This document shows, piece after piece, positions 30,229 through 64,000 of a stretch of 64,000 nt of DNA. Where the stretch lies: IMG/VR virus record IMGVR_UViG_3300009430_000004, positions 62,001 through 126,000 of that record. One strand, 5' to 3'. Under the pieces are notes generated by a model. It saw only the letters and a program-made list of their open reading frames with translations. It was not told where the DNA came from and did not search any database. The position numbers and the translations under genes were made by a program. The stretch's first letter is position 1. Each line of letters opens with the position of its first letter.

Positions 30229-33200
30229 TTAATTCTTCATGTTTTTTATTTGCCTAACAGCAACTAATTTATCTCCTTCTACTTTACATGTTGGTTTGTT
30301 TGATGGTTTAATATAATGACCAACAACGGTAAGCTTATTATTCTTATCCAATATCGGACATACAATTTCACCCTCACTAAATTCTTTCTTAGTAAAATAG
30401 CTTGGATTATCATCTACATTCTTTGCTTTATAAAGATTGATTAATGTAGCTTCAAGCAATGCTCTTCCATCGTTTCCTCTATAATCTTTTCCACAGTCAG
30501 GGCATGTACCAGTTTCATTCCATGCTTCTTCATAACCTATGAGTGCTCCACAATGAACACATCTAGCCATGATATCTCCCATAGATTCTTTCACAGGCTC
30601 CCATGGTTTACCAGAATAGATTTCCTGTAACTTACGCTTCATTTCAACCAAAACCTTATTACCAAACATGGTAAGTAGTATAGATGGTGTCATACGAGCT
30701 AAGACAGCTCCAGGAGCTATAACTGAAGAAACTTCTTCCTGTGATCTAAACTCTGAGTAAGGTTCATAACCTTCAGGTATAACCTCACCAATGATTGACT
30801 TTAGTGCTGTAAAGAACGTTATCTTATCTCCAACACCTACAGTATCTTTATATTTAATATAGAACTCGATTAATACACCTTCTCCAACTTCTGTTCCTTT
30901 AATCTTACCGTCCTTAGCCTCTATTTTTCCAGTGGCATCATTTAACAGAACACCTGCTTTGAATACAGAGTCGGATTTATCGTATTTGTTAATAATCTTC
31001 TTTTTCTTATTTATTTTTTCATAGTAATCTGAAACTATCTTTCTTAATGTCGGTGAAAGTTCTTCTAGTTCTACTGTTGAATATATCTTTATATCTTCAA
31101 TGACACCTGAGTATTTTGATTTAATAGGTGTCTTACCAAGAGACTTAATCTCTTCCTTAAGTTCATTTCCTACAGAAGCTAGGAACTTATTCAATGAATC
31201 GTCATCGAATGATGTTTCAAACCTAATTAATTCATCACCAACTTGTACCTTCTGTCCAATATCAACTATATAATCAACATTGGCGTTTTTACCAAGGGAT
31301 ACTACTTTCTGCATAACTACATCAGCAGCCATATCATAGCTTAGCTTTTTAGTTACGAAGGTTGAGTCTTCATATGTTGAATAAGTTGATAAACATGCTA
31401 CTTTTTGTAATGAACCTATATTAAATCTATTTCCATCTAATGGTGATTCACTAAAGAAGTGTTTATCAGATGCAAGAATATCATTTTCCTTAAACTTCTG
31501 ACCTTTCTTTAAATTACATGATAGTTGATTTGATAGGAAGAATCCACCTGCACCATTCTTAACAACTCTTGGCTGTGTATCAATAGCTTGAACTGATCCA
31601 TCCTTATACTTAACCATTGCAATTCCAGCATCTTCGTTAACTTCTACAACTTCCCCATCCAACTTAGCTCTAACAATAAAGTCGTTAGAAAGATGGTAAT
31701 GGATTACTTGTTCAGATCCGTTTGAAATCAATACTGGTGATGATTTGGCTATAGGTATAATGTGTTTGGACTGTTTAGTAGCCATCGCTGTTCTAATAGA
31801 GTCGTCACGGGTAACCCCTAGAGGGGATAATAACTCGGCAGGAGAGAATAGATTAGCATCTGTAAGCTTCTCTAACCTATCATCATTTACTTCAATATAA
31901 CCTCTTGGACTTACAATGTTTGGTTCAAGGGATAACTGTCTAACAACACCACAGTTTGCATCTGGAGAGGTTGATATAGATAGAATTCCCATCATAGTTG
32001 GGTCGTAAGAACGTTTGTCCTGAGTATAAGCTTCTGGAAGGTTCATACCTACATGACCCTTTGGAGTTATTGCTCGGGACTTTTCAAGTTCAACGATAGG
32101 ATTTAATATACTATAATCCTCAACAGTCTGTAATGTTAACAGTTTCTTCAACACTATATCCTGAGGTACTGAAATCTTAACTGGATTGTTATTGTACGCT
32201 GTAATTCTATATTGAGAATAAGCGTCAGCTATCTGTTTATATAGAATAGCATTCACTATTTCATTTGAACGCACTCTGTAGATATTCATATTATTTTCTT
32301 TGATTGATGAATTATCTGCAAGCAGAGAATTCGCAAATAATATTAAGCTAACGAAATCTGTAGGATAATTTAAATCCTCAAGAACTTCTTTAGTTATAGG
32401 GTCTATCATAAAGTCATAGAAGTTGTCAAATGCGTTACCTATCATCTTATTATTAAACATGATTTCGAAGATTGATAAGTATGCATCTTTACCATCAAAG
32501 TCGGCATAATCAAATGCTTTAGTTGGTATATCTGCGAAGGCATTTAGTAACAATGAATTCTCATAAGGATATTTGTCATATACAAGATATCCATCAGCGA
32601 ATTGTACAACACCTTCATTATTTGATACTTTAGGACGAGTGTCACTAAAGTGATGTCTTATATTTGCTTTTCTTAGTACACTGGTTATACCTTCAACATA
32701 ACCTAATAGCAATAATACAGGAACATTCTTGCTCATGATTGTTGCCTTAGTGTACATAAACTTCTTACCAGCAGTTGCAGAATCAAAATCCTCTACAAGT
32801 TTACCTTGGTCGCATGATAAGATAAAGTCTATAATATCCATTCCACCCATCATCTGAGTATTCAAGTCCATCAATATAGGTTCATTATTATTAAGGAAGA
32901 AACCTATACAGAAGTCGTTTTCTGTGAGTCTGTATTTTTTAGTATCAATTCTTGCCCGAACTTCATCCTGATTGAAAACAAACTCCGCATTATTAACCTT
33001 TATAATGCTATAAATCTTTGATAACTCGTCATATTCGAGTATAGACTTATATTTTGAGTTAGCAGCTAAGTTGTTACCATACTTAACCTTAACATTACTA
33101 CTTGGATTCAACAATGCTTTCTTAAACTTCTCAATCTTAGATGAAACCTTAGTACCAAATCTCCTAATAAACATCTTGTTGTAATTACTACAAACTTGAA

Positions 33201-34704
33201 CTTCATCAGGTCCAGTTTTAACTACGGGTTTCATGAAGAGTTGTTTTACGATAAGCTTTTTATTTCCACCAAGATACATAAATTTGTCATCTATAAACTT
33301 AGGCACATCAAATCGTAATCTGTGACGTACTCTATTGGCATCTTCAAGGTCAACTATATAAGTTTCCTTGAAGTTCATTTCATCTGAGCTGTCCACAACT
33401 TCGATATTTCTAACATAAACAGGTATTGACTTATCGTTAAGGGAAGTAATTATATTAACTAAATCCTTCTTAGATAAGGTTTCGTTATATGCTTTTTCAA
33501 AGTGTGGATATTTAATAGTTGTCATATTCTTATTGGTTGTTGTAACCTTATTCGATACATCAATTGATGGAATAGCGATTGATTTAGTATCCATCTTTTG
33601 AATTTCCTCAAGAGTCATTCTCTCAAGCTTTATTTTCCTCTGTTTTTCACGAAGTTCCTGGTCTCTCTTTATAGATAGAGTTGAACGACCTGTTTTTTGA
33701 CTTTGGTTAATATCATATACTTTCTTCAGAAGCTGTTGGTCAACAATCAGCTTATCTTCAAGCTTTTTCTTAATATCGTCAGCATCATCTTTAATATTAA
33801 CCTTCTCTTCTTCCATGACATCTTCAAGTCTATCCTTAACACTTTCTTCAAGCTCAGGACTTTCCTCTTCGTTTCCAGTGAACTTGTACGTTTCAATGAA
33901 TTTTGCAGCAACATCATTGAATATCTCGTATCTCTTAGCATCTTCCTCTATTTGTTTTTCATCATCCAATGCTGAAAGGTCAGCATGTATTTTTGAAATT
34001 TCTCTACGGAAGGCTGTGAATGATTTATCATCACATTGAGCAGGATTAACTCTCATCATTGAGTCATTATTATAGAAGACTATGTTGACATCCCCTAATT
34101 CCTTAAATTTGTCGAAGTATTTATACATCGCAAAATAAAGAAGTAGAACAGGATTATCAAAATTTAATCTCCTATTCTCAGCAGCTCTCTTTAATCCAGC
34201 TATCCTCCAGTCATCCATTCCTACAACGATTGTTTTTATTTTATAACCGTCCAATCGAGGATCATTAATGATATTCTTGAGATAATCAATATACCCTTTT
34301 GTTTTTAAGTCATATTTTAGCTTTCTGGCAAAATCAAAATATATAGTATTGTAAGTAGCTAGGTCAAAATACACATTCCTTTCATTAAGATTACTTATTG
34401 AAGGGACAGTATTTAGGAATTTAATTCCTGACTCTAGCTCACCATATATCGCTTCTCTCTCTTTTCTGTAGATTTTCCTATATGTCTTATTAGCTAACTT
34501 ACCTTTATAAATAGAGTCCATATAATAGAAATGGAACTTATTATTGTGATAAAGGTTTTTGTTTTCTATAAGACGCATAGAAGCATCCAGAGAACCGTTA
34601 TTGATGAATACAATACTATACATACTTTGAGCTTTTTGATCTACAGGCAATTGTGCCTTTTGTTTAAACACTTTCAAGTGCGGAATATCCGAAATAAAAA
34701 TCAT
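30229..34704 (-). CDS. rpoB: Multisubunit RNA polymerase beta-like subunit (probably virion RNAP) with long N-terminal extension and C-terminal Zn ribbon/SET-like appendage
   Basis: STSPDANCGVVRQL, RTAMATKQSKH, TYEDSTFV, VGDKITFFTALKSIIGEV and PGAVLARMT correspond to bacterial beta motifs (ETPEG.NIG, RALMGANMQRQ, NFEDS, GDKMAGRHGNKG, PLGVPSRMN). Late-type promoter at 34738-34749. Confidence 0.9.
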   Translation of the reverse strand: MIFISDIPHLKVFKQKAQLPVDQKAQSMYSIVFINNGSLDASMRLIENKNLYHNNKFHFYYMDSIYKGKLANKTYRKIYRKEREAIYGELESGIKFLNTVPSISNLNERNVYFDLATYNTIYFDFARKLKYDLKTKGYIDYLKNIINDPRLDGYKIKTIVVGMDDWRIAGLKRAAENRRLNFDNPVLLLYFAMYKYFDKFKELGDVNIVFYNNDSMMRVNPAQCDDKSFTAFRREISKIHADLSALDDEKQIEEDAKRYEIFNDVAAKFIETYKFTGNEEESPELEESVKDRLEDVMEEEKVNIKDDADDIKKKLEDKLIVDQQLLKKVYDINQSQKTGRSTLSIKRDQELREKQRKIKLERMTLEEIQKMDTKSIAIPSIDVSNKVTTTNKNMTTIKYPHFEKAYNETLSKKDLVNIITSLNDKSIPVYVRNIEVVDSSDEMNFKETYIVDLEDANRVRHRLRFDVPKFIDDKFMYLGGNKKLIVKQLFMKPVVKTGPDEVQVCSNYNKMFIRRFGTKVSSKIEKFKKALLNPSSNVKVKYGNNLAANSKYKSILEYDELSKIYSIIKVNNAEFVFNQDEVRARIDTKKYRLTENDFCIGFFLNNNEPILMDLNTQMMGGMDIIDFILSCDQGKLVEDFDSATAGKKFMYTKATIMSKNVPVLLLLGYVEGITSVLRKANIRHHFSDTRPKVSNNEGVVQFADGYLVYDKYPYENSLLLNAFADIPTKAFDYADFDGKDAYLSIFEIMFNNKMIGNAFDNFYDFMIDPITKEVLEDLNYPTDFVSLILFANSLLADNSSIKENNMNIYRVRSNEIVNAILYKQIADAYSQYRITAYNNNPVKISVPQDIVLKKLLTLQTVEDYSILNPIVELEKSRAITPKGHVGMNLPEAYTQDKRSYDPTMMGILSISTSPDANCGVVRQLSLEPNIVSPRGYIEVNDDRLEKLTDANLFSPAELLSPLGVTRDDSIRTAMATKQSKHIIPIAKSSPVLISNGSEQVIHYHLSNDFIVRAKLDGEVVEVNEDAGIAMVKYKDGSVQAIDTQPRVVKNGAGGFFLSNQLSCNLKKGQKFKENDILASDKHFFSESPLDGNRFNIGSLQKVACLSTYSTYEDSTFVTKKLSYDMAADVVMQKVVSLGKNANVDYIVDIGQKVQVGDELIRFETSFDDDSLNKFLASVGNELKEEIKSLGKTPIKSKYSGVIEDIKIYSTVELEELSPTLRKIVSDYYEKINKKKKIINKYDKSDSVFKAGVLLNDATGKIEAKDGKIKGTEVGEGVLIEFYIKYKDTVGVGDKITFFTALKSIIGEVIPEGYEPYSEFRSQEEVSSVIAPGAVLARMTPSILLTMFGNKVLVEMKRKLQEIYSGKPWEPVKESMGDIMARCVHCGALIGYEEAWNETGTCPDCGKDYRGNDGRALLEATLINLYKAKNVDDNPSYFTKKEFSEGEIVCPILDKNNKLTVVGHYIKPSNKPTCKVEGDKLVAVRQIKNMKN

Positions 34705-41734: not shown

Positions 41735-44146
41735 ATGGAAAGAAATGTAAAATCTAGGAGGATGGGAAGTATGAAACCACAAATTATTTCTGACAATGCA
41801 CAGAGAATTTTAACAGAGAAAAATTACTTTAGAAATGGTGAAACCCACTGGGGAGATATCACCGACAGAGTATCAAAAGGAATCTCATTAGGAGAGCCTA
41901 AGGTAGAAGACAGGGAGAACGTTGCTCATGAAATAAATGAAGCATTAAAATCCCTTGAGTTTATATTTAGTAGTCCATGCCTTCTCAACGCAAGTGTTGT
42001 GAATCCTGGACAATTATCATCATGTTTCGTGGTAGGGTTGAGAGACAACATAGAAGCTATCAGTAAATGTGATGCAAACTTTGCAAAGATATTCCAACGT
42101 AATGGAGGAGCTGGAACAGACTTATCTGTTTTAAGACCTAACAAATCAAGAGTTGAGAATACTAATGGTTATTCATGTGGTGTTGTAGGATTTATGTATA
42201 AATTCAATGCAACAGCAGATATAATGACAAGAAATAATCCTACTAAAAGAGGAGCATTAAAGCTAAATCTTTCAGTATGGCATCCAGATATAATTGACTT
42301 CATCCACTCAAAATCAAAGGATGGGGAACTATCATTGATGAATATATCAGTTTCATTATTCGATGAGTTCATGATGGCTTGTTTAAATGATGAAGACTGG
42401 AATCTTGAATTCCCTGATTATTCATTTAATAAGGAAGTATATAACAATGAATGGGATGGAGACCTTGCTTTATGGAAAGAAAAGGGTTACCCTGTAGTTG
42501 TTTATCAGACTATAAAAGCAAGAGAATTGCTTGACATACTTTGTTTACAAGCATGGAAGACTGGTGAACCTGGAGTTAACTTCCAAGATGTAATGAATAG
42601 GGCTAATATGAATCCACATCTTGGTAGACAGATATTCACAAATCCATGTAACGAATTTGCTAATCTTATTTACACAAGCTGTAACTTAGCAAGCTTGAAC
42701 TTATTAAGACTTGTTATTGCTGGTAAATTTGATAGACAAAAGTTTATTAAGATGGTTAAGAATGGAATTAGATGGCTTGATGATATGATATCAGTTAACA
42801 AGCTCCCTCTACCTGAAATTCAAGAAATGACTGAGAAAATCAGACCTGTTGGATTAGGTGTTATGGGATTTGCTGATGTTTTATATGCTCTAAGAATTCC
42901 ATATAACTCAGTACAGGGTATACAATTTGCAGATGATTTGTTCTCTTTAATGAGACAGGCGGCTATTGAAGCTTCATCTGAATTAGCAGAGGAAAGAGGA
43001 TGTTATCCTGGATGGGAAGGAAGCAAGTGGCAACAGATGGGTATTCCAATGAGGAATAGTAATCTCTTATCAATTGCTCCAACAGGAACAATCTCAACAA
43101 TTGCTGATGTAAGTGGTTCTATTGAGCCAAACTTTGCATTAGTATTCTACAGAAAGACAAACTCAGGACAAAAATACTTATTCGTAAACGAGACATTCAA
43201 AGCTGAACTCGTTGAAAGAGGTATATATAGTGAAGAATTACTTGAGAAGATATTCAAGAATCACGGAAGCTGCGTGGGTATATCAGAGGTTCCAGAGGAT
43301 ATGCAGAGAATATATGTTACCGCACATGATATCACACCAATGGATCATTTGGATATGGTTGCTGTAATACAAAAACATATCGACCTTGCTATCAGTAAAA
43401 CAATTAACTTTGAAAACTCTGTTCCAGTTGAGGATATTAAGGGAGTTATTACTGAAGCTTGGAAAAAAGGTGTTAAGGGTATGACTGTATACAGAGATGG
43501 GTGTAGATCTGACCAGACTTTAACAACAGGTTCTACTTATGATAAGAAAGAAGAACCAAAGAAGATTAAGACAAGAAGAGAAATGGGTAGAAGACTTCCA
43601 GGTGCAACTTATGATGCTGAATCAGCATGTGGAAAGTTCTATTTAACTGTAAATAGAGATGCTGAAGGTAACTTTGTTGAAACCTTCGTTAATTTCAAGA
43701 AAGGACTTTGTAAATCAAATATAGATGGACTTAACAGGATGATTTCATTGGCTTTAAGGAATGGAATTCCAGCCGAAGCAGTAATTGAACAATTGAAAGG
43801 AATTTCATGTTCAGCTTGCACTAGAGTTGCTTCTAATGGAGATAAGCAAATTGATGGAATTAGCTGTCCAGATATAATTGCTAAGGTTCTTGAGCAAGAA
43901 TTTAAAATGGCTGCAACAAATCAAACACCAGTATCGGTGAATAAGGTTGAATTTCCAGCCGTTTGGACAACAGGTAAAGATGTTGCTGGAACAGGAATAG
44001 ATGCTAATTTAGTTAAATCTCATAAAACTCCACAAGAAGTAGCAGAATGTATTGCTAATAACATCTGCCCAGAATGTGGTACTGAGTTAACTCACGGAGC
44101 ATGTGTAGAATGTCCAGATTGTGGCTGGAATAAGTGTGGAGCTTAA
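41735..44146 (+). CDS. nrdJ: Class II (adenosylcobalamin-dependent) ribonucleotide reductase with TSCPD-like and C-terminal Zn-ribbon regions
   Basis: QLSSCFV, TGEPG, TNPCNE, SCNLASLNL, RPVGLG, IAPTGTIS, ISKTIN, KGMTVYRDG, SCPD, terminal CPECG...CPDCG. Likely start 41771; no NrdB gene nearby. Confidence 0.9.
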   Translation: MERNVKSRRMGSMKPQIISDNAQRILTEKNYFRNGETHWGDITDRVSKGISLGEPKVEDRENVAHEINEALKSLEFIFSSPCLLNASVVNPGQLSSCFVVGLRDNIEAISKCDANFAKIFQRNGGAGTDLSVLRPNKSRVENTNGYSCGVVGFMYKFNATADIMTRNNPTKRGALKLNLSVWHPDIIDFIHSKSKDGELSLMNISVSLFDEFMMACLNDEDWNLEFPDYSFNKEVYNNEWDGDLALWKEKGYPVVVYQTIKARELLDILCLQAWKTGEPGVNFQDVMNRANMNPHLGRQIFTNPCNEFANLIYTSCNLASLNLLRLVIAGKFDRQKFIKMVKNGIRWLDDMISVNKLPLPEIQEMTEKIRPVGLGVMGFADVLYALRIPYNSVQGIQFADDLFSLMRQAAIEASSELAEERGCYPGWEGSKWQQMGIPMRNSNLLSIAPTGTISTIADVSGSIEPNFALVFYRKTNSGQKYLFVNETFKAELVERGIYSEELLEKIFKNHGSCVGISEVPEDMQRIYVTAHDITPMDHLDMVAVIQKHIDLAISKTINFENSVPVEDIKGVITEAWKKGVKGMTVYRDGCRSDQTLTTGSTYDKKEEPKKIKTRREMGRRLPGATYDAESACGKFYLTVNRDAEGNFVETFVNFKKGLCKSNIDGLNRMISLALRNGIPAEAVIEQLKGISCSACTRVASNGDKQIDGISCPDIIAKVLEQEFKMAATNQTPVSVNKVEFPAVWTTGKDVAGTGIDANLVKSHKTPQEVAECIANNICPECGTELTHGACVECPDCGWNKCGA

Positions 44147-44218
44147 TAAAAAACATTATTGGAGATAGTTAGATTTTATCTAACTATCTCCTTAACTTAT
44201 ATTTAGGGGGTGTTTTAA

Positions 44219-44890
44219 ATGTTACCCGAAACAATTTTTCATAAATCTCCTTGGATAGAAGGGGAATATCAATACTTTGAAGATAATGACGGAACTAAAT
44301 GGAAAAGAAAATTTGATATGAGTGGTAGTAGTAACCATGGAAAATGGGAAAAAATAAGTGGAGGGGGAGAAAGGATGGAAAGAGTTGATAAAATTAACTA
44401 CTATTTAGACCAGGCTGAAGTTATTGCTGAAAGAAGCACATGTCTTAGAAGACAATATGGTGCTATAATAGTAAAGAATGACGAACCTATCGCATCAGGA
44501 TATAATGGAGCACCAAGAGGTGTCGTAAACTGTTGTGATGTTGAGTTCTGTATGAGAGAAATAAAGAATATTCCAGCAGGCGAACGATATGAAATGTGTC
44601 GTTCGGTACATGCTGAGATGAATGCAATGTTATCTGCTAAAAGGTCAGATATGATAGGTTCAACAATGTATCTAGTTGGACTCGATGTTGCTACAGGAAG
44701 TTATTCTAAATATAACAAACCCTGTAAAATATGCTCCAGAATGATAATTAATTCTGGCATAGAAGAAGTCGTAATGAGAATAGATAAACAAAACTATGAA
44801 ACCATAGTAACAGCTTCTCTTCAGAGTGAAATGGATGAAGAGATGATGATAATGGAATATGAAGCTAAGAAAATAAAGGAGGGAAAGTAA
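44219..44890 (+). CDS. dCMP deaminase
   Basis: RSTCLRRQYGA, GYNGAPRG, VHAEMNA and PCKIC Zn-deaminase motifs; the deaminase domain starts at the internal MERVDK after GGAGGGGG. Confidence 0.9.
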   Translation: MLPETIFHKSPWIEGEYQYFEDNDGTKWKRKFDMSGSSNHGKWEKISGGGERMERVDKINYYLDQAEVIAERSTCLRRQYGAIIVKNDEPIASGYNGAPRGVVNCCDVEFCMREIKNIPAGERYEMCRSVHAEMNAMLSAKRSDMIGSTMYLVGLDVATGSYSKYNKPCKICSRMIINSGIEEVVMRIDKQNYETIVTASLQSEMDEEMMIMEYEAKKIKEGK

Positions 44891-44894
44891 AAAA

Positions 44895-45822
44895 ATGGGA
44901 TTAATTAAATTAATAACTCATGGAGATATGGACGGTATCTCATGTTATTTGATGGTTAAACTTATACCTAACCATAAGAATGTAGATGTTACATTTGAGG
45001 ATTACAACACAGTCAATAATACAATAATTATATTTGTTAACAGCGGAGAATATAAAAATTATTCTCATGTCTATGTAACTGACCTAGGAATTAGTGAAGA
45101 GGCTGCTGCTAAATTAGATTCTATTAAGGATGAGTGTATGGTTACATTCATAGACCACCATGATACTAATAAGTGGATAGCTGAAAAATATTCATGGGCT
45201 ACTGTTATTTCTACAGTAGACGGAAGAAAGATTTCTGCAACAAAACTAATATTTGATAAATATAATCAATATATGCCAATCAATTGCATAGGTCAAATAA
45301 GCCTTTTCGCAAGTCTCGTTAGCGATTATGACACCTACACATGGAAAGATGAGAATAAACAAGATCCTAAACTTCTACAGGATTTATTCTCAATTTACGG
45401 TAGGAATATTTTCCTTGAGAAGATGGAGCAAAGACTAGCTACAAACCAACCTATAATAACAGAAGACGATAAGTTCCTTTCTTATGATTGAAAGACATCG
45501 TATTGATAGATATATCAAGTATAAGATGAAGGAAGTTATCTATAGAGAACTTAATGGATTTAAAGTCGGTATAGTATTTGCTGACCAATATGTGAGTGAA
45601 TTGGGAAATACTCTATGTGAAAAACTAGATATTGATATTGCGGCAATAGTTGATTTCAACTCAAAATGTATCAACTATAGATGTATTCGAGATGATATAC
45701 ATTTAGGGAAAGAATTCGCTTCACTATATGGTGGAGGGGGACACCCTAAGGCGGCAGGCAGTCAACTTACTAAGGAACTTATTAGTAGTGTAGCAGATAT
45801 GGTATTTACATTAGATAAATAG
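44895..45822 (+). CDS. DHH/DHHA1 phosphoesterase split into two ORFs (44895..45491 and 45484..45822) by an apparent +1 frameshift
   Basis: THGDMDG, VTDLG, IDHH and DYDT in ORF1; GGGGHPKAAG in ORF2. Removing one T near 45478-45480 gives continuous KFLLMIERHRIDRY. Confidence 0.8.
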
Positions 45823-57439: not shown

Positions 57440-58099
57440 ATGGGCTGTGTAATGAGGATGAATTCTGAAAAGTTCATCATGAATTTTATGAAAGACTACG
57501 ATCCAAGTGAATTTCAATTCATCTTGGTGTCAGAGAATATTTCAACAGAGAAGAGATATAAAAATGTAATGTCGGTGCCAGCTCTGATACCACCTCCAAA
57601 CATAATAGCGACTCATATTAATGAGGGTTATGGTAAGGAGTACAAGAAAAAATATCTTGACTTTCTTAAGAAAGGCGAGATAAACTCCTTAGTATCAATC
57701 ATTGTTAAAGCTGCTTTAGGAGGAATGAATATCGTCCTTCTATGTTCCAAGTCAGAAGATGAATACAAATATCTTAAACTTCTTTGTGAGTTTATCGAAG
57801 ATGAGTATAAACTCAAAACTTATACCCTGAAGTCATTTAAGGAAGACCCTAAGAAAGCCTCTAAGATTAAGAACAAGGAAGAGGTTGTTAGAGTTCTTGC
57901 AAAAGCTATGGAGAAGCTTCATGATGTTGGAAACAAACTATCACCAGAAATTGATGAGGACAAATTCATCAAGAGATTGAAGAAGCTTGATAAGAATGAG
58001 CTCCGAGTATACTGTAAGAACAAGGGTATCAAGATAGATAATGACATGGATAAGAAAGATATCATAAAGAAGATTAGAAAGAAAGTATTCAAGGACTAA
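57440..58099 (+). CDS. Hypothetical protein with C-terminal SAP/Rho-N-like helix-extension-helix
   Basis: LKKLDKNELRVYCKNKGIKIDNDMDKKDIIKKI. Confidence 0.55.
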   Translation: MGCVMRMNSEKFIMNFMKDYDPSEFQFILVSENISTEKRYKNVMSVPALIPPPNIIATHINEGYGKEYKKKYLDFLKKGEINSLVSIIVKAALGGMNIVLLCSKSEDEYKYLKLLCEFIEDEYKLKTYTLKSFKEDPKKASKIKNKEEVVRVLAKAMEKLHDVGNKLSPEIDEDKFIKRLKKLDKNELRVYCKNKGIKIDNDMDKKDIIKKIRKKVFKD

Positions 58100-59497: not shown

Positions 59498-59504
59498 AAG
59501 GAGT

Positions 59505-59720
59505 GTGTATTTTATGTTTAATAATAATGATGGAAATAACAGATGGAGAATAGTTCCAATGAAAAGAGGCGGATACAGAATTGAGCCAGGTAGTATATTA
59601 GATGGAATTGAATCTCCTGCTGGAATAGTGGCAGCTATCGTAATCATAGGGTATGCAGCATATAAGATTTATCAAGTGCTTGCACCGTTACTCTATGGAA
59701 GTTTCTTTATAATGTTTTAA
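59505..59720 (+). CDS. Small membrane protein
   Basis: 71 aa with a hydrophobic C-terminal half. Confidence 0.5.
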   Translation: MYFMFNNNDGNNRWRIVPMKRGGYRIEPGSILDGIESPAGIVAAIVIIGYAAYKIYQVLAPLLYGSFFIMF

Positions 59721-59721
59721 T

Positions 59722-59955
59722 TTGAAGGGGGTAAATGATATGTCAAATAAAAAGTTTACAAAAATCGCATTATGTATTATTACTTGTACAACAGGCGTAT
59801 TGCTAGTTAATGGTTTAATATTAGCTTTTGCAGCTTATGTATGTTCCAATGCAACTTTGTTTGACGTTCTTACGTTAACTTTCAAATTAACAAGCGGATT
59901 TTGGGCAGTTGTTTTAAGTGCAATATTGGTTCACTATAAAAGATTAATTGCATAA
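59722..59955 (+). CDS. Small two-TM membrane protein
   Basis: Two hydrophobic segments; likely start at MSNKK after GGGGGT. Confidence 0.5.
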   Translation: MKGVNDMSNKKFTKIALCIITCTTGVLLVNGLILAFAAYVCSNATLFDVLTLTFKLTSGFWAVVLSAILVHYKRLIA

Positions 59956-60010
59956 AAGCAAGCTGGGGGATAAAAGATGGGGAAGAAATTTATAAAAAGC
60001 AAAAGAAAAT

Positions 60011-60046
60011 GACCAAGTAGCGAAAGCTACTTGGTCTTTATTTTTT
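60011..60046. terminator. Terminator between convergent operons
   Basis: gaccaagtagc-gaaa-gctacttggtc followed by a T tract. Confidence 0.75.
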
Positions 60047-60431
60047 TCTCTTTTTGATATTCCATTAATAATAACTCCACATTCTTAGTGACATATCTAA
60101 TTATATATGTCCTATCGTGGTAAAATTCAAGTTCTTTTAAGAATGATTCATTAAAGGACGTTAAAACTCTTTCAACCAATTCCTTTAGGTCATCCTCAAA
60201 CTTATAAATTATTTTGATATCTTTTAGTTCATATTCGAATTTATATTTGTACATAAACTCCCTTTGAACTGTCTCATTGATGATTGTGAGAAGCTTTTTG
60301 TATTTAAGTCCGCTCACCTTTGTTTTTTTATTTTCCTCTAACCATTTTCCTATTTTGGAAACAAGTATTAGGTTTGAGACAATCATCGCTAACGCAACAA
60401 CTATCATAGCTATTAGATTAATATCCTTCAT
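60027..60431 (-). CDS. Membrane-anchored hypothetical protein
   Basis: N-terminal TM helix; TAATG translational coupling to the GGDEF gene. Confidence 0.6.
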   Translation of the reverse strand: MKDINLIAMIVVALAMIVSNLILVSKIGKWLEENKKTKVSGLKYKKLLTIINETVQREFMYKYKFEYELKDIKIIYKFEDDLKELVERVLTSFNESFLKELEFYHDRTYIIRYVTKNVELLLMEYQKEKKIKTK

Positions 60432-60910
60432 TATACCATCTCCCCTCTTTTTAGATTCTTAAGATTAAAGAATATAGTCTCAAGCGATTGATTTTCAAGG
60501 TCTTGGAAAGACATATATGTCTCAGGACATAATTTATAAGCTGCCATCTTATCCATTGTTTTAGTAAAAGTTTCCCAATCAATATCATGTTTAAGGAGAA
60601 CTATAAGCTCATCTCCTCCAAATCTAATTGGTATAAAATCATCTACTTTTGCTGCAATTAATGAATGTAAAATAGCCATTGCTGTCCGCATTATACACAT
60701 GTCTCCAACCATGTACCCCTGAGTTTCATTCATACATTTTAAATCTTTAATATCCACAAATATCATTTTGTTATAATCTTTTAAGTTTTCGAAATACAGA
60801 ATTTCCCTTCTGTAAAAAAAAGTTAGGTTGTCCCTCAATAGAGTTTCAACCTTTAAAGCAGCCTCACAGTTACAATTACCGCAAGCTTCTTTGAAGAATT
60901 TGTTGCTCAT
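60431..60910 (-). CDS. Stand-alone GGDEF (diguanylate cyclase-like) domain protein
   Basis: IFVDIKDLKCMNETQGYMVGD...RFGGDELIV matches D-I-D-x-FK-x-IND-xx-GH-xx-GD...R-x-GGDEF; SD AGGAGG. Confidence 0.75.
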   Translation of the reverse strand: MSNKFFKEACGNCNCEAALKVETLLRDNLTFFYRREILYFENLKDYNKMIFVDIKDLKCMNETQGYMVGDMCIMRTAMAILHSLIAAKVDDFIPIRFGGDELIVLLKHDIDWETFTKTMDKMAAYKLCPETYMSFQDLENQSLETIFFNLKNLKRGEMV

Positions 60911-60935
60911 AACCCACGCCTCCTAAGTTATTATA

Positions 60936-61592
60936 TTAAAAGTCAAGATTCTTAGACCATTTAGTTATAGAATCTTTTAACTCCAATACATTTTTATCGA
61001 AACTATCATATTTCTCCGATAATTCGATATAATGATTAATTTTACTTATTTGTTCCTCGTGTAATCCATTCTTATATTTTTTCAGAAAGGCGGTTAAATC
61101 TCCAAATGCTTGATGTAAGTTAATAAATATATTGTTTTCATGAACCTCTTGATGAACAGTCTTGGATAACATAACAACTTGAATATTGTTAGCAAAGTGC
61201 TCATCTATGAGTATATCAGATACTATAAATGTATTTATTTTCTTATTATTATAAATTAGATAATCGGTTACTATAGCGGCGTAGTCGAATAATGTGAGAA
61301 TAGGACCATGATGCATTTCTATTTCGGCATATTCATCCTCAATATTGGATAATACCTGACAAAATGTCAATCCTATTTCTTCCTTAAGATATTTTATATA
61401 TCTTGAATAAAAGTTTGATGTTCTAACCATCTTCTCGACAGATTTAACAAAAGATACGAAATTGTCAATATTAGAGAAATATTCAGCATCTTTATAAAAT
61501 GGTAATTCATACTCACCAGTGTCTGACTCGATGGTTGGATTCTTGCTAATTTTCTTGTAGTCAATATTAGGTAATTTATTCATAACCATCAT
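60936..61592 (-). CDS. HNH-like protein, paralogue of 51353..52030
   Basis: C...IEMHHGPILTLFD...VVMLSKTVHQEVH; late-type promoter at 61626-61637. Confidence 0.6.
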   Translation of the reverse strand: MMVMNKLPNIDYKKISKNPTIESDTGEYELPFYKDAEYFSNIDNFVSFVKSVEKMVRTSNFYSRYIKYLKEEIGLTFCQVLSNIEDEYAEIEMHHGPILTLFDYAAIVTDYLIYNNKKINTFIVSDILIDEHFANNIQVVMLSKTVHQEVHENNIFINLHQAFGDLTAFLKKYKNGLHEEQISKINHYIELSEKYDSFDKNVLELKDSITKWSKNLDF

Positions 61593-61670
61593 CCCCTTTT
61601 TGATTTTATTTGTACTACAATTACTTAATATATTGTTAATGTTATAAATATGAAAGGAGTTGACGATATA

Positions 61671-64000
61671 ATGTATATTTTGGATACTATATTTAGAGAC
61701 CTTCGTACGATAATAAATACTATAGTTATCAAGTACGATAAAAAAGGAAAAGAATTAGATACATTAGACATCGTAAGAGAATCTGATAGATATATATCTG
61801 CAAAATTAGCTCAGGATAGTTTTAATACTTATCAGAGCTTTGATATTGATGTTATAGTTGCAGCGGGAATCAATGACCTTGAATTTGCAACAAAATGTAA
61901 TGCGGATAAATATCTAATCCCCCTCACTAAGAGGAATGATGTTGTTTCAAAACAACGTGAAAAAGTTATAAACACTTATGTTGAAAGAAATAATTACTAC
62001 AGAATGCTCAATGGACTACCTGATATTGAAGATTTTGATTATATCTTCGTTGATGAAATAACCTGCACTGAGCTAAGTCTTAATCCTAATACCCCAATAC
62101 ATGAGTATACTAAGGAGGAGATAATAAGACTTGAAAGCTATGGCATATTAGAATCAATAAAGAAAGAATATCTAACTAAGAAGTATTTAAATTATCTTGG
62201 ACCTAATAGTATAGATATAGTTAGGGCAAGGAGTGCCAGAAACTTCAGTATTTTGAGAATGTCTCAGAGTATGTCAGAGAGTTTTTATGAAGAGTTTAAT
62301 AACATATATGAACAGTGTAGAGAATACTTTATGTCTGTTCTATATATAAAAGAGTATGGTAAGGAGTATGACTTATATGATAACTTCATGGCAATGATGA
62401 TATTCATAATGTCAATACAAAGACTTATCACAAATACTTTTAAATATGGTATTGAGCGAGATTTCTACGACCTAGGATCAATAGAAATGATGTTCAATGC
62501 TTACAATGTTCCGTTCATAGCGGAACTGCCTATAGAATATCAACGTATTCTCCTTCGTAACCTAAATAACCTTCTAAGGTATAAATCTACTGATAAGGTT
62601 CTATATGATGTTTGTACTCTATTGGGTTTTGAACGTATAAGAATATTTAAGTATTATCTTATGAAGGAACATGCTCTCGATGTCAATGAGAACCCATTGT
62701 TTGTTTATAAAACTATTAAGGATGAGCATGGTAATGACATAGTGGTTGAAGATAAAGAGCAGATGTACCGATTCTATTTCCAGACAGTTGACCTTAAGGA
62801 AAGAAATGTTGCACTTGCACTCACCGACTCGACAGCTAAACTTGATTATAATCAAGTAACTGTAGAAGACCCATATTGGTGGGAAGACGAAGATCTTAGG
62901 GAAGCACTGTACAATACTGAGTTCAATTATGTTGAAACTAAATTCTTGAATATGAATATAATGTACAAATTGACAGAAATGTTATTTGAGGTTATATATA
63001 CATTCAGAATGTTGGTTGATAAAAAAACAGAAGTTGATCGTATTACAATACAACTTCCGAAGATATTCGATAAGAAGGAGATTAAATTATTTGATTTGGC
63101 TATCTTCTTATCTGCTTTACTATGTAAGAAGAATAAGATGAGTGGGAACATCCTACACACCCCATCTAAGATTCTATCAGTAATGGGATTTAATTTCAGT
63201 GCTGATATGAATAAGGTGAGAGAATATATTGATAAAAACCCTCGTCTATTTGACAGAGAAACGCTGAAAAGATATCTTGAGAGATTGAATATTTATAATC
63301 CTCAGGATGTAAATGCGGTATTTACTAATGTTAAGAAGTTTAACGATTTCATTGTAGACAAGATGGCTAAGAGCCAGAATATTGAAGAGTATAGAGCATA
63401 TCAACAATTACACAAGACTCTCATGATAACAAATGAGACAACAGACTTATTCAAAAAAGATGATGGTACTATTGCTGAAACATTCCTTGATTATCTTGAG
63501 TATAGCGACTTTGACCTATATACTTTCGTAACAACATGCGATGAGTCTAAAATTTCTGAGTATATTGAACACGGCTTATTTAAACTAAATGAGCTCATGA
63601 CAACCTTAAAATATACTTATATACTTAATGACTCAAACAATGCATTGCTTAATGCTGTAATAACATTAATTCGTTTCTTCAAGTCATATACAACAGACTT
63701 GAGTAACTTCAATATCTTATATCTAATGGATAGTCGATATTACAATATGATAAAGTTAATCAATGACATCCATTTTATAGATAAATGCAACTGTATTAAA
63801 GAGCCAATGAAGGCTATAAAATTAAAAGAAAAACTTACTCCAAAGAGTAAAATATGGCATAATGATTTGGAGCAATTCAAATACAAGGTTAAATCTGTTA
63901 GTGTTGATGCAACTATTAGTGATGAGAAGCATTTCGAAAATGTTATTTCATCAATTAATGCAAATTATAAAATTTACTCCAAATTGATGCTAGATTATAT
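61671..64000 (+). CDS. Large putative virion structural protein, truncated at window end (not in ORF track)
   Basis: SD AAAGGAG; MYILDTIFRDLRTIINTIVIKYDKK...YVERNNYYRMLNGLP...LRYKSTDKV...; frame appears open to the window end. The E.N.YYR.L.G.P motif is reminiscent of jumbo-phage baseplate-associated proteins. Confidence 0.65.
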   Translation, partial: MYILDTIFRDLRTIINTIVIKYDKKGKELDTLDIVRESDRYISAKLAQDSFNTYQSFDIDVIVAAGINDLEFATKCNADKYLIPLTKRNDVVSKQREKVINTYVERNNYYRMLNGLPDIEDFDYIFVDEITCTELSLNPNTPIHEYTKEEIIRLESYGILESIKKEYLTKKYLNYLGPNSIDIVRARSARNFSILRMSQSMSESFYEEFNNIYEQCREYFMSVLYIKEYGKEYDLYDNFMAMMIFIMSIQRLITNTFKYGIERDFYDLGSIEMMFNAYNVPFIAELPIEYQRILLRNLNNLLRYKSTDKVLYDVCTLLGFERIRIFKYYLMKEHALDVNENPLFVYKTIKDEHGNDIVVEDKEQMYRFYFQTVDLKERNVALALTDSTAKLDYNQVTVEDPYWWEDEDLREALYNTEFNYVETKFLNMNIMYKLTEMLFEVIYTFRMLVDKKTEVDRITIQLPKIFDKKEIKLFDLAIFLSALLCKKNKMSGNILHTPSKILSVMGFNFSADMNKVREYIDKNPRLFDRETLKRYLERLNIYNPQDVNAVFTNVKKFNDFIVDKMAKSQNIEEYRAYQQLHKTLMITNETTDLFKKDDGTIAETFLDYLEYSDFDLYTFVTTCDESKISEYIEHGLFKLNELMTTLKYTYILNDSNNALLNAVITLIRFFKSYTTDLSNFNILYLMDSRYYNMIKLINDIHFIDKCNCIKEPMKAIKLKEKLTPKSKIWHNDLEQFKYKVKSVSVDATISDEKHFENVISSINANYKIYSKLMLDY

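What the first reader, a model, noticed from the sequence alone, without database searches (positions are those of the whole stretch)
60027..61592. Phage-encoded minimal GGDEF protein in a late operon, coupled to a membrane protein
Seen: a 159-aa protein with the metal-binding Asp, K..N...G...GD and RFGGDEL, an N-terminal CGNCNC, no sensor domain, no RxxD I-site, and a shortened C-terminus. It is flanked by an HNH-like gene and a translationally coupled TM protein. Known: GGDEF domains make c-di-GMP as dimers, and c-di-GMP controls motility and biofilm in Clostridia and Bacilli. Inference: the phage may alter host second-messenger levels (the DHH/DHHA1 enzyme at 44895 could act on the degradation side) or poison host cyclases as a dominant-negative partner.
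Basis: partly seen in the sequence, partly recalled or inferred. Interest (0 to 1): 0.6.

Follow-up and report, generated by a model that had tools for sequence, protein, structure and literature searches.

The report
Stand-alone trimmed GGDEF cyclase in jumbo phage
A 218-kb AR9/PBS1-like jumbo phage from groundwater carries a 159-residue, sensor-less and shortened GGDEF protein with an intact diguanylate-cyclase active site, probably used late in infection to raise the host's c-di-GMP; similar stand-alone GGDEF genes are already annotated, but untested, in other large phages.

Summary
Window 60431-60910 (-) encodes a 159-aa protein that passes the curated GGDEF cut-offs of Pfam and NCBIfam. 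Its confident AlphaFold2 model (pLDDT 88.6) matches only GGDEF domains strongly (Z 11-12.9). The metal-binding Asp, guanine-reading Asn/Asp and GGDE(L) loop are present. They are invariant in the one full-length homologue (about 50% identical), which lies in a 236-kb phage contig. The RxxD I-site is absent. About 15-20 residues (a beta-hairpin) are missing after the GGDEF loop.

The gene lies in a three-gene minus-strand unit: an AR9 gp261-like protein, the GGDEF, then a single-pass membrane protein. The unit starts at an AR9-type late promoter motif and ends at a terminator.

- A related contig has the membrane gene directly after the gp261-like gene with no GGDEF, so the pairing is not obligate.
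- The DHH link has no specific support.
- It is not an mCpol/Panoptes system.

Stand-alone GGDEFs are already annotated in Bacillus phages SP-15 and G, and at least 105 occur in IMG/VR.

Best reading: a feedback-free diguanylate cyclase acting on host receptors. Activity is untested. Interest is moderate.

The parts
61626..61637 (-). AR9-type late (non-virion RNA polymerase) promoter motif AACA-N6-TA, with the predicted start site at 61626, 34 nt before the ATG at 61592
   Evidence: The motif is defined in AR9 (PMC5312081). In this genome it stands in sense orientation within 100 nt upstream of 76 of 224 crude gene calls, against 12 in antisense. Its density is 4.5 per kb in sense intergenic DNA, against 0.8 per kb genome-wide. 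Most copies lie 15-40 nt before the start codon. This copy was located.
61668..61680 (-). Early-promoter-like element with one mismatch to AAATATATATTAT and an A rather than G at the expected start; probably not functional
   Evidence: Found. In AR9 a one-mismatch copy was inactive (PMC5312081).
60936..61592 (-). 218-aa protein, orthologue of AR9 gp261 (hypothetical), possibly a degenerate HNH-like protein; conserved core gene of AR9/PBS1-like phages
   Evidence: phrog_12252 at E 3.8e-44. tblastn finds 31-41% identity in AR9, PBS1, BpSp, phiR1-37, Staphylococcus jumbo phages and Listeria LPJP1. The divergent arrangement with the gp260-like virion protein is the same as in AR9. There is no Pfam hit.
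60431..60910 (-). 159-aa stand-alone GGDEF protein (GGDEL loop) with no I-site and a deleted beta-hairpin; predicted diguanylate cyclase
   Evidence: An AGGAGG Shine-Dalgarno sequence lies 8 nt before the ATG.
60027..60431 (-). 134-aa protein with one N-terminal transmembrane helix, a predicted cytoplasmic helical domain and a basic tail; function unknown
   Evidence: The TAATG overlap was seen. It is conserved in L002, L011 and L010 (41% identity). The AlphaFold2 model is all-helical with pLDDT 75.8. Fold matches are unspecific, Z 7.0 or less. No phage homologue was found at E<0.3.
60011..60036 (.). Bidirectional intrinsic terminator (11-bp stem with 6 GC pairs, T-runs on both strands) closing the minus-strand unit and the convergent plus-strand genes
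   Evidence: It overlaps the TAG stop of the membrane gene.

Best explanation
The 159-aa protein is a stand-alone, trimmed GGDEF-domain enzyme. It is carried as a lineage-specific accessory gene of an AR9/PBS1-like jumbo phage.

It is transcribed together with a conserved gp261-like gene and a small membrane-protein gene. Transcription starts from a late promoter read by the phage's non-virion RNA polymerase.

The most likely mechanism has four steps, all inferred:
1. Two copies pair up.
2. Each copy binds GTP-Mg through D53, D100/E101, N61 and D70.
3. Together they make 3',3'-c-di-GMP.
4. Product feedback does not operate, because the RxxD I-site is missing.

The phage genome has no EAL, HD-GYP or PilZ gene. 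The signal would therefore act on host receptors.

The most plausible pay-off is shutting down flagellar rotation or remodelling the surface of the already infected cell. This would exclude superinfection, or spare progeny, in a phage lineage whose cultured members (PBS1, AR9) need working flagella to infect.

Shown here: family membership, fold, conserved active site, operon structure and late-type promoter motif. Inferred: dimerisation, catalysis, product and biological pay-off.
For: Family and fold:
- GGDEF passes the curated cut-offs.
- The AlphaFold2 model has pLDDT 88.6 and pTM 0.82, with a beta-alpha-alpha-beta-beta-alpha-beta-alpha palm.
- The top 50 Foldseek PDB matches are all GGDEF domains.
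- The exhaustive VIA search gives 33 GGDEF entries at Z 8.9-12.9, for example 5euh_A at Z 12.6, rmsd 2.9 A over 132 residues. GTP cyclohydrolase III scores 8.2, class III cyclases 7.4 or less, and Cas10 6.1.

Active site:
- D53, K58, N61, G65, G69, D70, R96, G98, G99, D100 and E101 are invariant between the window protein and its 47-50% identical homologue in L002. Nine of them are invariant or nearly invariant across the 38 aligned GGDEFs; G99 and D100 are not listed there.
- N61 and D70 correspond to the guanine-reading Asn335 and Asp344 of PleD (established knowledge). Asn is the residue linked to guanine recognition in PMC12657218.

Operon:
- The strong Shine-Dalgarno sequence, TAATG coupling and terminator were seen.

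Accessory status: AR9 and BpSp have the gp261 orthologue alone.

No EAL, PilZ or HD_5 match in the complete 218-kb genome.

PBS1 and AR9 are flagellotropic and need functional flagella (PMC9266447). c-di-GMP stops flagellar motors through PilZ-type proteins (PMC13432727).
Against: - No biochemical data exist.
- HMMs match only the N-terminal two thirds of the domain (profile 34-91 of 161 and 10-104 of 168).
- The segment after the GGDEF loop is 46 residues against 60-66 typical. The effect of losing that hairpin on catalysis is unknown.
- The Lys that aligns with the conserved C-terminal 'YxxK' lysine (K151) is Gln in L002 and L011.
- The loop reads GGDEL, not GGDEF.
- There is no recognisable dimerisation domain.
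- The gene is dispensable within the clade: it is absent in L010 and carries a 2-nt deletion in the single L011 contig.
- The host is unknown, so it is not known that it has c-di-GMP receptors or flagella.
- Whether this phage is flagellotropic was not tested.
Confidence: 0.5

Rival explanations
1. It is a catalytically dead or feeble GGDEF that works by binding. It could be a GTP or c-di-GMP sensor, or a partner that heterodimerises with host cyclases and poisons them. The latter is the reader's dominant-negative idea.
For: The domain is truncated after the GGDEF loop and the C-terminal third is not recognised by HMMs. The K151 equivalent is Gln in L002. There is no dimerisation module, so pairing with a host GGDEF is conceivable.
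Against: Every catalytic and base-reading residue is kept over about 50% sequence divergence. That is the pattern of an enzyme, not of degenerate GGDEF receptors, which usually lose the GG[DE]EF acids. The I-site, the usual c-di-GMP binding site of receptor-type GGDEFs, is absent.
Confidence: 0.2
2. It is an active cyclase with another product, such as 3',3'-cGAMP as in Hypr-GGDEFs, c-di-AMP, or a linear dinucleotide. The product would serve as a decoy or interfere with host cyclic-nucleotide immunity.
For: GGDEF-fold enzymes can change product (Hypr GGDEFs, PMC9140294 listed; mCpol makes 2',3'-c-di-AMP). Jumbo phages carry several counter-nucleotide enzymes (PMC7824862).
Against: The position that is Ser in adenine-accepting enzymes is Asp (D70), and N61 is kept. 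Both favour guanine (specificity logic).
Confidence: 0.1
3. The GGDEF and the membrane protein form a two-gene signalling module like mCpol/Panoptes. A minimal cyclase would hold a membrane effector in check, and the phage would use the pair for exclusion of rivals or for lysis timing.
For: A minimal cyclase is immediately followed by, and translationally coupled to, a membrane protein. The same order occurs in L002 and L011. Panoptes has this gene logic.
Against: - The protein is a sequence-level GGDEF, whereas mCpols nearly lack the motif. Cas10 palm scores only Z 6.1 against 12 or more for GGDEFs.
- The partner has one TM helix and an all-helical domain. It does not have two TM helices plus a beta-barrel, CARF or SAVED sensor.
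- The partner occurs without the cyclase in L010 at similar conservation.
- PADLOC finds nothing.
Confidence: 0.07
4. It is a passenger gene drifting towards loss, with no current role.
For: It is absent in L010, frameshifted in L011 and missing from all cultured AR9-like phages. It has only three to four relatives in 1.84 billion representative proteins.
Against: The ORF is intact, with a strong Shine-Dalgarno sequence, in two complete or near-complete jumbo genomes. The active site is selectively conserved.
Confidence: 0.1

Closest known systems
Bacillus phage SP-15 gp150 'diguanylate cyclase' (AMM44948.1 / A0A127AWB9, 183 aa) and Bacillus phage G gp350 (254 aa)
   Same: These are stand-alone or nearly stand-alone GGDEF proteins encoded by jumbo phages of Bacillota. 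They are the best structural matches among viral proteins (E 3.4e-7 and 6.1e-7). They are annotated from sequence only.
   Different: The phage lineages are unrelated (Thornevirus, Donellivirus). Both have the full-length domain, with spacing 62 and 66 against 46 residues. SP-15's gene sits among glycosyltransferase and teichoic-acid-type genes, not next to a membrane protein. Sequence similarity to the window protein was too low for tblastn at E 0.01.
Cellular diguanylate cyclases (PleD, WspR, DgcZ, SadC, GcbC, T. maritima GGDEF)
   Same: Same fold (Z 11-12.9), the same metal-binding, base-reading and GG[DE]E residues, and a short helix before the D-x-L-T motif.
   Different: It has no sensor or dimerisation domain and no RxxD I-site. 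The beta-hairpin after helix 3 is deleted. The loop is GGDEL. An N-terminal CxxC is present. It is phage-encoded and under a late viral promoter.
Other roughly 150-aa hairpin-less GGDEFs seen here (P0024, P0144, and L014 in a 248-kb viral contig)
   Same: They share the small size, the same kind of shortening (spacing 44-46) and an R-R-E-like motif in place of N-R. At least L014 is in a jumbo-size viral contig.
   Different: Identity is only about 30%. They keep the RxxD I-site, lack the CxxC, and have a different gene context (P0144 follows an RdRP-family gene and a DUF488 gene).
mCpol (OptS) of Panoptes
   Same: A minimal palm-domain cyclase of similar size encoded next to a membrane protein.
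   Different: mCpol is Cas10-like, nearly lacks the GGDEF motif, makes 2',3'-c-di-AMP, and pairs with 2TM beta-barrel or CARF effectors. None of these applies here.

Membership tests
GGDEF domain (PF00990 / TIGR00254), diguanylate cyclase | Profile score above the curated cut-off | tested here: met
   Pfam 31.9 bits against 23.8. TIGR00254 40.3 bits against 37.4. Only the N-terminal two thirds of the profile are matched.
GGDEF domain (PF00990 / TIGR00254), diguanylate cyclase | Palm-like GGDEF fold | tested here: met
   The model has pLDDT 88.6. GGDEF structures score Z 11-12.9 and other palm enzymes 8.2 or less. The model was built with an alignment that contains canonical GGDEFs.
GGDEF domain (PF00990 / TIGR00254), diguanylate cyclase | GG[D/E][D/E]F loop with both acidic residues | tested here: met
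   G98-G99-D100-E101-L102, with F replaced by L. The homologue in L002 has GGDEF.
GGDEF domain (PF00990 / TIGR00254), diguanylate cyclase | Metal-binding Asp on strand 1 and guanine-reading Asn/Asp (PleD D327, N335, D344) | tested here: met
   D53, N61 and D70 lie in invariant or nearly invariant columns. The PleD numbering is from established knowledge.
GGDEF domain (PF00990 / TIGR00254), diguanylate cyclase | C-terminal phosphate-binding Lys/Arg (PleD K442, R446) | tested here: inconclusive
   K151 aligns with the conserved YxxK lysine, but it is Gln in L002 and L011. K154 is conserved instead. The alignment of this segment is weak.
GGDEF domain (PF00990 / TIGR00254), diguanylate cyclase | Full-length domain with the beta-hairpin between helix 3 and the SxG strand | tested here: not met
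   Spacing is 46 residues against a mode of 60-66. Only one strand (131-137) lies between helices 3 and 4. This is a variant feature, not one that excludes membership.
GGDEF domain (PF00990 / TIGR00254), diguanylate cyclase | RxxD inhibitory I-site (common, not universal) | tested here: not met
   V89 and F92 stand at the R and D positions. It is also absent in L002.
GGDEF domain (PF00990 / TIGR00254), diguanylate cyclase | Homodimerisation and synthesis of c-di-GMP from GTP | not testable with these tools
   This needs biochemistry.
mCpol / Panoptes (OptS-OptE) | Cas10-like minimal palm that lacks the GGDEF sequence motif | tested here: not met
   The GGDEF motif and profile are present. Cas10 scores Z 6.1 against 12 or more for GGDEFs. 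No mCpol entry is among the 50 rows shown.
mCpol / Panoptes (OptS-OptE) | Obligate partner with two TM helices plus a nucleotide-sensing beta-barrel, CARF or SAVED domain | tested here: not met
   The partner has one TM helix and an all-helical domain. It occurs without the cyclase in L010. PADLOC gave no hit.
HNH endonuclease (for the upstream 218-aa protein) | Match to an HNH profile or a beta-beta-alpha-metal motif | tested here: inconclusive
   There is no Pfam, NCBIfam or PADLOC hit. An ExHH...N...H...H pattern is visible. The nearest family-bearing language-model clusters are HNH at 0.94.

The most novel reading that the evidence does not exclude
Jumbo phages of Bacillota carry a phage-specific class of trimmed, feedback-free GGDEF cyclases. 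These flood the infected cell with c-di-GMP late in infection. That engages the host's own motor brake or surface programme, so that flagellum-dependent relatives (and the phage's own progeny) can no longer infect the doomed cell. This would be superinfection exclusion by hijacking a host second messenger. The conserved N-terminal CxxC might act as a zinc-mediated dimerisation device replacing the missing sensor domain.
Probability: 0.2. Interest if true: 0.65.

Novelty: new variant of a known kind. Interest (0 to 1): 0.4.

Why it matters
Phages are known to interfere with cyclic-nucleotide signalling mostly by degrading or sequestering immune signals. For c-di-GMP, one known route is a phage peptide that binds a host cyclase (PMC8085984). 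I found no paper that characterises a phage-made diguanylate cyclase, although such genes are annotated in several large phages. A 159-residue, regulator-free GGDEF would be a convenient test case for two things. One is whether lytic phages rewrite the host's motility and biofilm switch. The other is the smallest functional diguanylate cyclase, a possible tool for raising c-di-GMP at will. If it is inactive, it is an ordinary accessory gene.

Tried and rejected
- blastn of 59500-62500 against 50,697 phage records found no match.
- tblastn of the GGDEF against phages gave only six weak hits. These turned out to be ordinary multi-domain bacterial-type GGDEF proteins in unverified faecal 'Bacteriophage sp.' scaffolds.
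- The single-protein scan of IMG/VR found nothing. The 38-sequence alignment was too diverse to seed a scan. An 8-sequence alignment worked.
- PADLOC found no defence-system match for any of the three proteins, apart from a chance Cas7d hit at E 0.004.
- Complex prediction of the GGDEF with residues 30-134 of the membrane protein scored 0.00. The verdict was 'no answer', so it is evidence neither for nor against binding.
- The fold search for the membrane protein gave only unspecific helical matches (best Z 7.0, atlastin stalk). The Atlas search gave viral hypotheticals and a weak holin-like lead at 0.85.
- The sequencing-run search found one DNA run (groundwater metagenome, probably the source sample) and no RNA run. 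Expression could not be checked and read laying was not used.
- The mCpol/Panoptes idea was considered and rejected (see the membership test).
- The DHH link was considered and found unspecific.
Full report
**Setting**

The window is bases 62001-126000 of a 218,088-bp virus record with direct terminal repeats, estimated complete. Its multisubunit RNA-polymerase beta-like protein (30229-34704, -) is 35-38% identical to those of Listeria phage LPJP1, Staphylococcus jumbo phages and Bacillus phages AR9 and PBS1. The phage is therefore a distant AR9/PBS1-like jumbo phage, most likely of a Bacillota-type host. The only public run that holds the stretch is a groundwater metagenome.

**The observation**

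Three minus-strand ORFs occupy the flagged stretch:
- 60936-61592, 218 aa
- 60431-60910, 159 aa
- 60027-60431, 134 aa

The 159-aa protein passes the curated cut-offs for GGDEF in Pfam (31.9 against 23.8 bits) and NCBIfam TIGR00254 (40.3 against 37.4 bits). Only the first two thirds of the profiles are matched. phmmer against PDB sequences returns only diguanylate cyclases; the best is DosC at E 3.5e-5.

The I-site RxxD is absent. When the loop is put in register with canonical sequences, V89 and F92 occupy the Arg and Asp places.

**Gene signals**

- The GGDEF gene has an AGGAGG Shine-Dalgarno sequence 8 nt before its ATG.
- Its TAA stop overlaps the ATG of the next gene (TAATG).
- An 11-bp-stem bidirectional terminator at 60011-60036 closes the unit.

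**Fold**

An AlphaFold2 model was built on 38 aligned sequences. It has pLDDT 88.6 and pTM 0.82. It shows two short N-terminal helices, then strand 48-54, helices 57-64 and 66-86, the hairpin 92-96/101-106 that carries GGDEL, helix 112-124, one strand 131-137 and a last helix 143-153.

- Foldseek against PDB lists only GGDEF domains in its first 50 rows.
- An exhaustive VIA-align search of 48,161 representative chains gives 33 GGDEF entries at Z 8.9-12.9, for example GcbC 5euh_A at Z 12.6, rmsd 2.9 A over 132 residues.
- Other palm enzymes score lower: GTP cyclohydrolase III 8.2, class III cyclases 7.4 or less, Cas10 6.1.

The domain is a trimmed version. From the GGDEF loop to the D/E-x-x-hydrophobic-Y/F-x-x-K motif of the last helix there are 46 residues. 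In 132 relatives the mode is 60-66, and only five of them, the window's own protein included, have fewer than 52. What is missing is the beta-hairpin that normally lies between helix 3 and the 'SxG' strand. The ferredoxin-like palm core itself is complete.

**Relatives**

The family is very small.
- The word-index search of 5.8 billion proteins found one homologue, P0002 (50% identity), on a 235,747-bp contig.
- The exhaustive HMMER scan of 1.84 billion representatives found only 541 proteins at E 0.001 or better and three at 1e-10 or better.
- Only one fragment (P0006) also covers the unusual C-terminus. All other hits are ordinary GGDEF proteins matching residues about 25-120 at 30-45% identity.

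In the two relatives with context, L002 and L011, the gene order is the same: 218-aa gene, GGDEF, membrane-protein gene. Between the window protein and L002 (47-50% identity) every active-site residue is invariant, and L002 has the canonical GGDEF loop.

Two observations argue that the gene is dispensable.
- In L010, a 2.8-kb contig of a related phage, the membrane-protein gene follows the 218-aa gene after 26 nt, with no GGDEF gene between them.
- In L011 the GGDEF reading frame is broken by a 2-nt deletion relative to L002. This rests on a single contig, so an assembly error cannot be excluded.

**Neighbours**

*The 218-aa protein.* It belongs to phrog_12252 (E 3.8e-44). It is the orthologue of AR9 gp261 and has homologues in PBS1, BpSp, phiR1-37, Staphylococcus jumbo phages and LPJP1. 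In AR9 and BpSp it stands divergently next to the gp260-like virion protein, as it does here, but it is alone on its strand. The GGDEF and the membrane protein are therefore additions of this sub-lineage. 'HNH-like' is a lead only.

*The 134-aa protein.* It has one N-terminal hydrophobic helix followed by a Lys-rich stretch, which by the positive-inside rule suggests a cytoplasmic C-terminal domain. The model is all-helical with moderate confidence (pLDDT 75.8). No informative fold or sequence match was found. Its conservation is the same whether or not a GGDEF precedes it: 41% identity to both L002 and L010.

**Timing**

The AR9 late promoter consensus AACA-N6-TA/G (PMC5312081) is strongly enriched in this genome.
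- It stands in sense orientation upstream of 76 of 224 crude gene calls, against 12 in antisense.
- Its density is 4.5 per kb in sense intergenic DNA, against 0.8 per kb genome-wide.
- Most copies lie 15-40 nt before the start codon.

One copy, AACAATATATTA at 61637-61626, lies 34 nt before the first ATG of the 218-aa gene. The AR9 early consensus is also conserved in this genome, with 34 sites at one mismatch or fewer. The only copy near the operon (61680) has a core mismatch and lacks the G start, a kind of deviation that inactivated an AR9 site. 'Late operon' is thus a reasonable inference, not a measurement.

**What it most likely does**

The conserved metal ligands (D53, D100/E101) and guanine-reading residues (N61, D70), together with a complete palm core, point to a working diguanylate cyclase. 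It would have no sensor input and no product inhibition. The complete phage genome has no EAL, PilZ or HD-GYP-type (HD_5) match, so the product would have to act on host receptors.

The cultured relatives PBS1 and AR9 are flagellotropic and need functional flagella (PMC9266447). c-di-GMP stops flagellar motors through PilZ-type proteins (PMC13432727). In B. subtilis this is the MotI clutch, which I state from my own knowledge. Motor arrest in the infected cell, giving superinfection exclusion or protection of progeny, is therefore the most specific pay-off I can propose. It is speculation.

Points against activity:
- the missing hairpin
- the weakly conserved C-terminal Lys (Gln in L002)
- the lack of any dimerisation domain
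- the evidence of dispensability

I put 0.5 on 'active cyclase that raises host c-di-GMP'.

**Rivals**

A binding-only or dominant-negative role is less parsimonious, because catalytic residues are selectively kept.

A different nucleotide product is disfavoured by the Asn/Asp pair.

The mCpol/Panoptes analogy (minimal cyclase plus membrane effector) fails on three tested points:
- the protein is a sequence-level GGDEF, whereas mCpols nearly lack the motif;
- the partner is not a 2TM protein with a sensor domain;
- the partner exists without the cyclase.

The 198-aa protein at 44895 matches only the DHH N-terminal domain, below the cut-off. It sits beside a dCMP deaminase and a ribonucleotide reductase. 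Its homologues in many large Bacillota phages are annotated as oligoribonuclease. DHH enzymes of jumbo phages have been proposed as counter-defence phosphodiesterases (PMC7824862).

**Comparison with what is known**

Phage-encoded GGDEF proteins are not new as annotations.
- BFVD holds 'diguanylate cyclase' of Bacillus phage SP-15 (183 aa), Bordetella phage CN1 (152 aa) and gp350 of Bacillus phage G.
- A tblastn with a canonical small GGDEF hits 175 phage-database records, some of them bacterial contamination.
- A pattern scan of IMG/VR confirmed at least 105 loci. Eleven lie in contigs of 150-425 kb, and several other ORFs are about 150-210 aa.
- SP-15's gene lies inside a glycosyltransferase and teichoic-acid-type cluster.

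The 2021 survey of 224 jumbo phages discusses phosphodiesterases but no GGDEF cyclase. Phrase searches found no paper characterising a phage-made diguanylate cyclase.

The present protein is therefore a divergent, trimmed, I-site-less variant of an annotated but functionally unexplored class. Its shortening is shared with a few other small GGDEFs (P0024, P0144, L014), at least one of them in a jumbo-size viral contig.

**Verdict**

Novelty: new variant of a known kind. Interest: moderate (0.4). The decisive step is a simple enzyme assay.

Noticed in passing
window 15605-27526 (-): A single ORF of 3,973 aa, by far the largest in the window. It was not analysed.
   Followed up: no
whole genome G000; example window 61626-61637 (-): The AR9 late promoter motif AACA-N6-TA/G is conserved and strongly enriched upstream of genes in this distant relative (76 of 224 genes in sense, 12 in antisense). 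The AR9 early consensus AAATATATATTAT-N6-G is also present, with 34 sites at one mismatch or fewer. Both promoter types of the two viral RNA polymerases therefore seem to be conserved across the group.
   Followed up: partly
L010:1-497: A related phage contig has the membrane-protein gene directly after the gp261-like gene, with no GGDEF gene between them. The cyclase gene was either inserted in, or lost from, this spot within the clade.
   Followed up: yes
L011:907-944: A 2-nt deletion relative to L002 splits the GGDEF ORF into 78-aa and 127-aa pieces in a single 1.3-kb Logan contig. It may be a pseudogene or an assembly error.
   Followed up: partly
window 60431-60910 (-), residues 10, 13, 108, 128: A CxxC near the N-terminus is conserved in the window, L002 and L011. 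C128 (in L-C-P) and residue 108 (His in the window, Cys in L002) are conserved between the window and L002. Together they might form a zinc site, either within one chain or between two chains as a dimerisation device.
   Followed up: no
window 57440-58099 (+); L013:1171-6465: The 219-aa protein here has a weak DUF488-N3a match (E 0.1). In an unrelated contig, a DUF488-N3a gene and a 1,393-aa RdRP-family (PF05183) gene stand directly before another roughly 150-aa minimal GGDEF (P0144). This may be coincidence or a recurring neighbourhood.
   Followed up: no
L094 (Bacillus phage SP-15, 131137-136571): SP-15's stand-alone GGDEF gene is embedded among genes for UTP-glucose-1-phosphate uridylyltransferase, glycosyltransferases and a CDP-glycerol glycerophosphotransferase. 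This hints at a link between phage c-di-GMP and cell-wall or DNA glycosylation in that phage.
   Followed up: no
window 41735-45491 (+): A nucleotide-metabolism cluster holds a ribonucleotide reductase large subunit, a dCMP/cytidine deaminase (223 aa) and a 198-aa DHH-type phosphoesterase. Homologues of the DHH protein in Clostridioides, Bacillus, Lysinibacillus, Moorella and Streptococcus phages are annotated as oligoribonuclease (NrnB).
   Followed up: partly
L005-L007 (MT836378, MT838645, MT838977): Unverified 'Bacteriophage sp.' scaffolds from human faecal samples carry ordinary multi-domain GGDEF proteins next to housekeeping-type genes (for example a Mg-chelatase/ComM-like gene). They are probably bacterial DNA in a phage collection, so counts of 'phage GGDEFs' from that collection are inflated.
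   Followed up: partly
window 59505-59955 (+): Two small hydrophobic ORFs (71 and 77 aa) converge on the same bidirectional terminator as the GGDEF unit. An 84-aa membrane ORF occupies the same place in L010.
   Followed up: no
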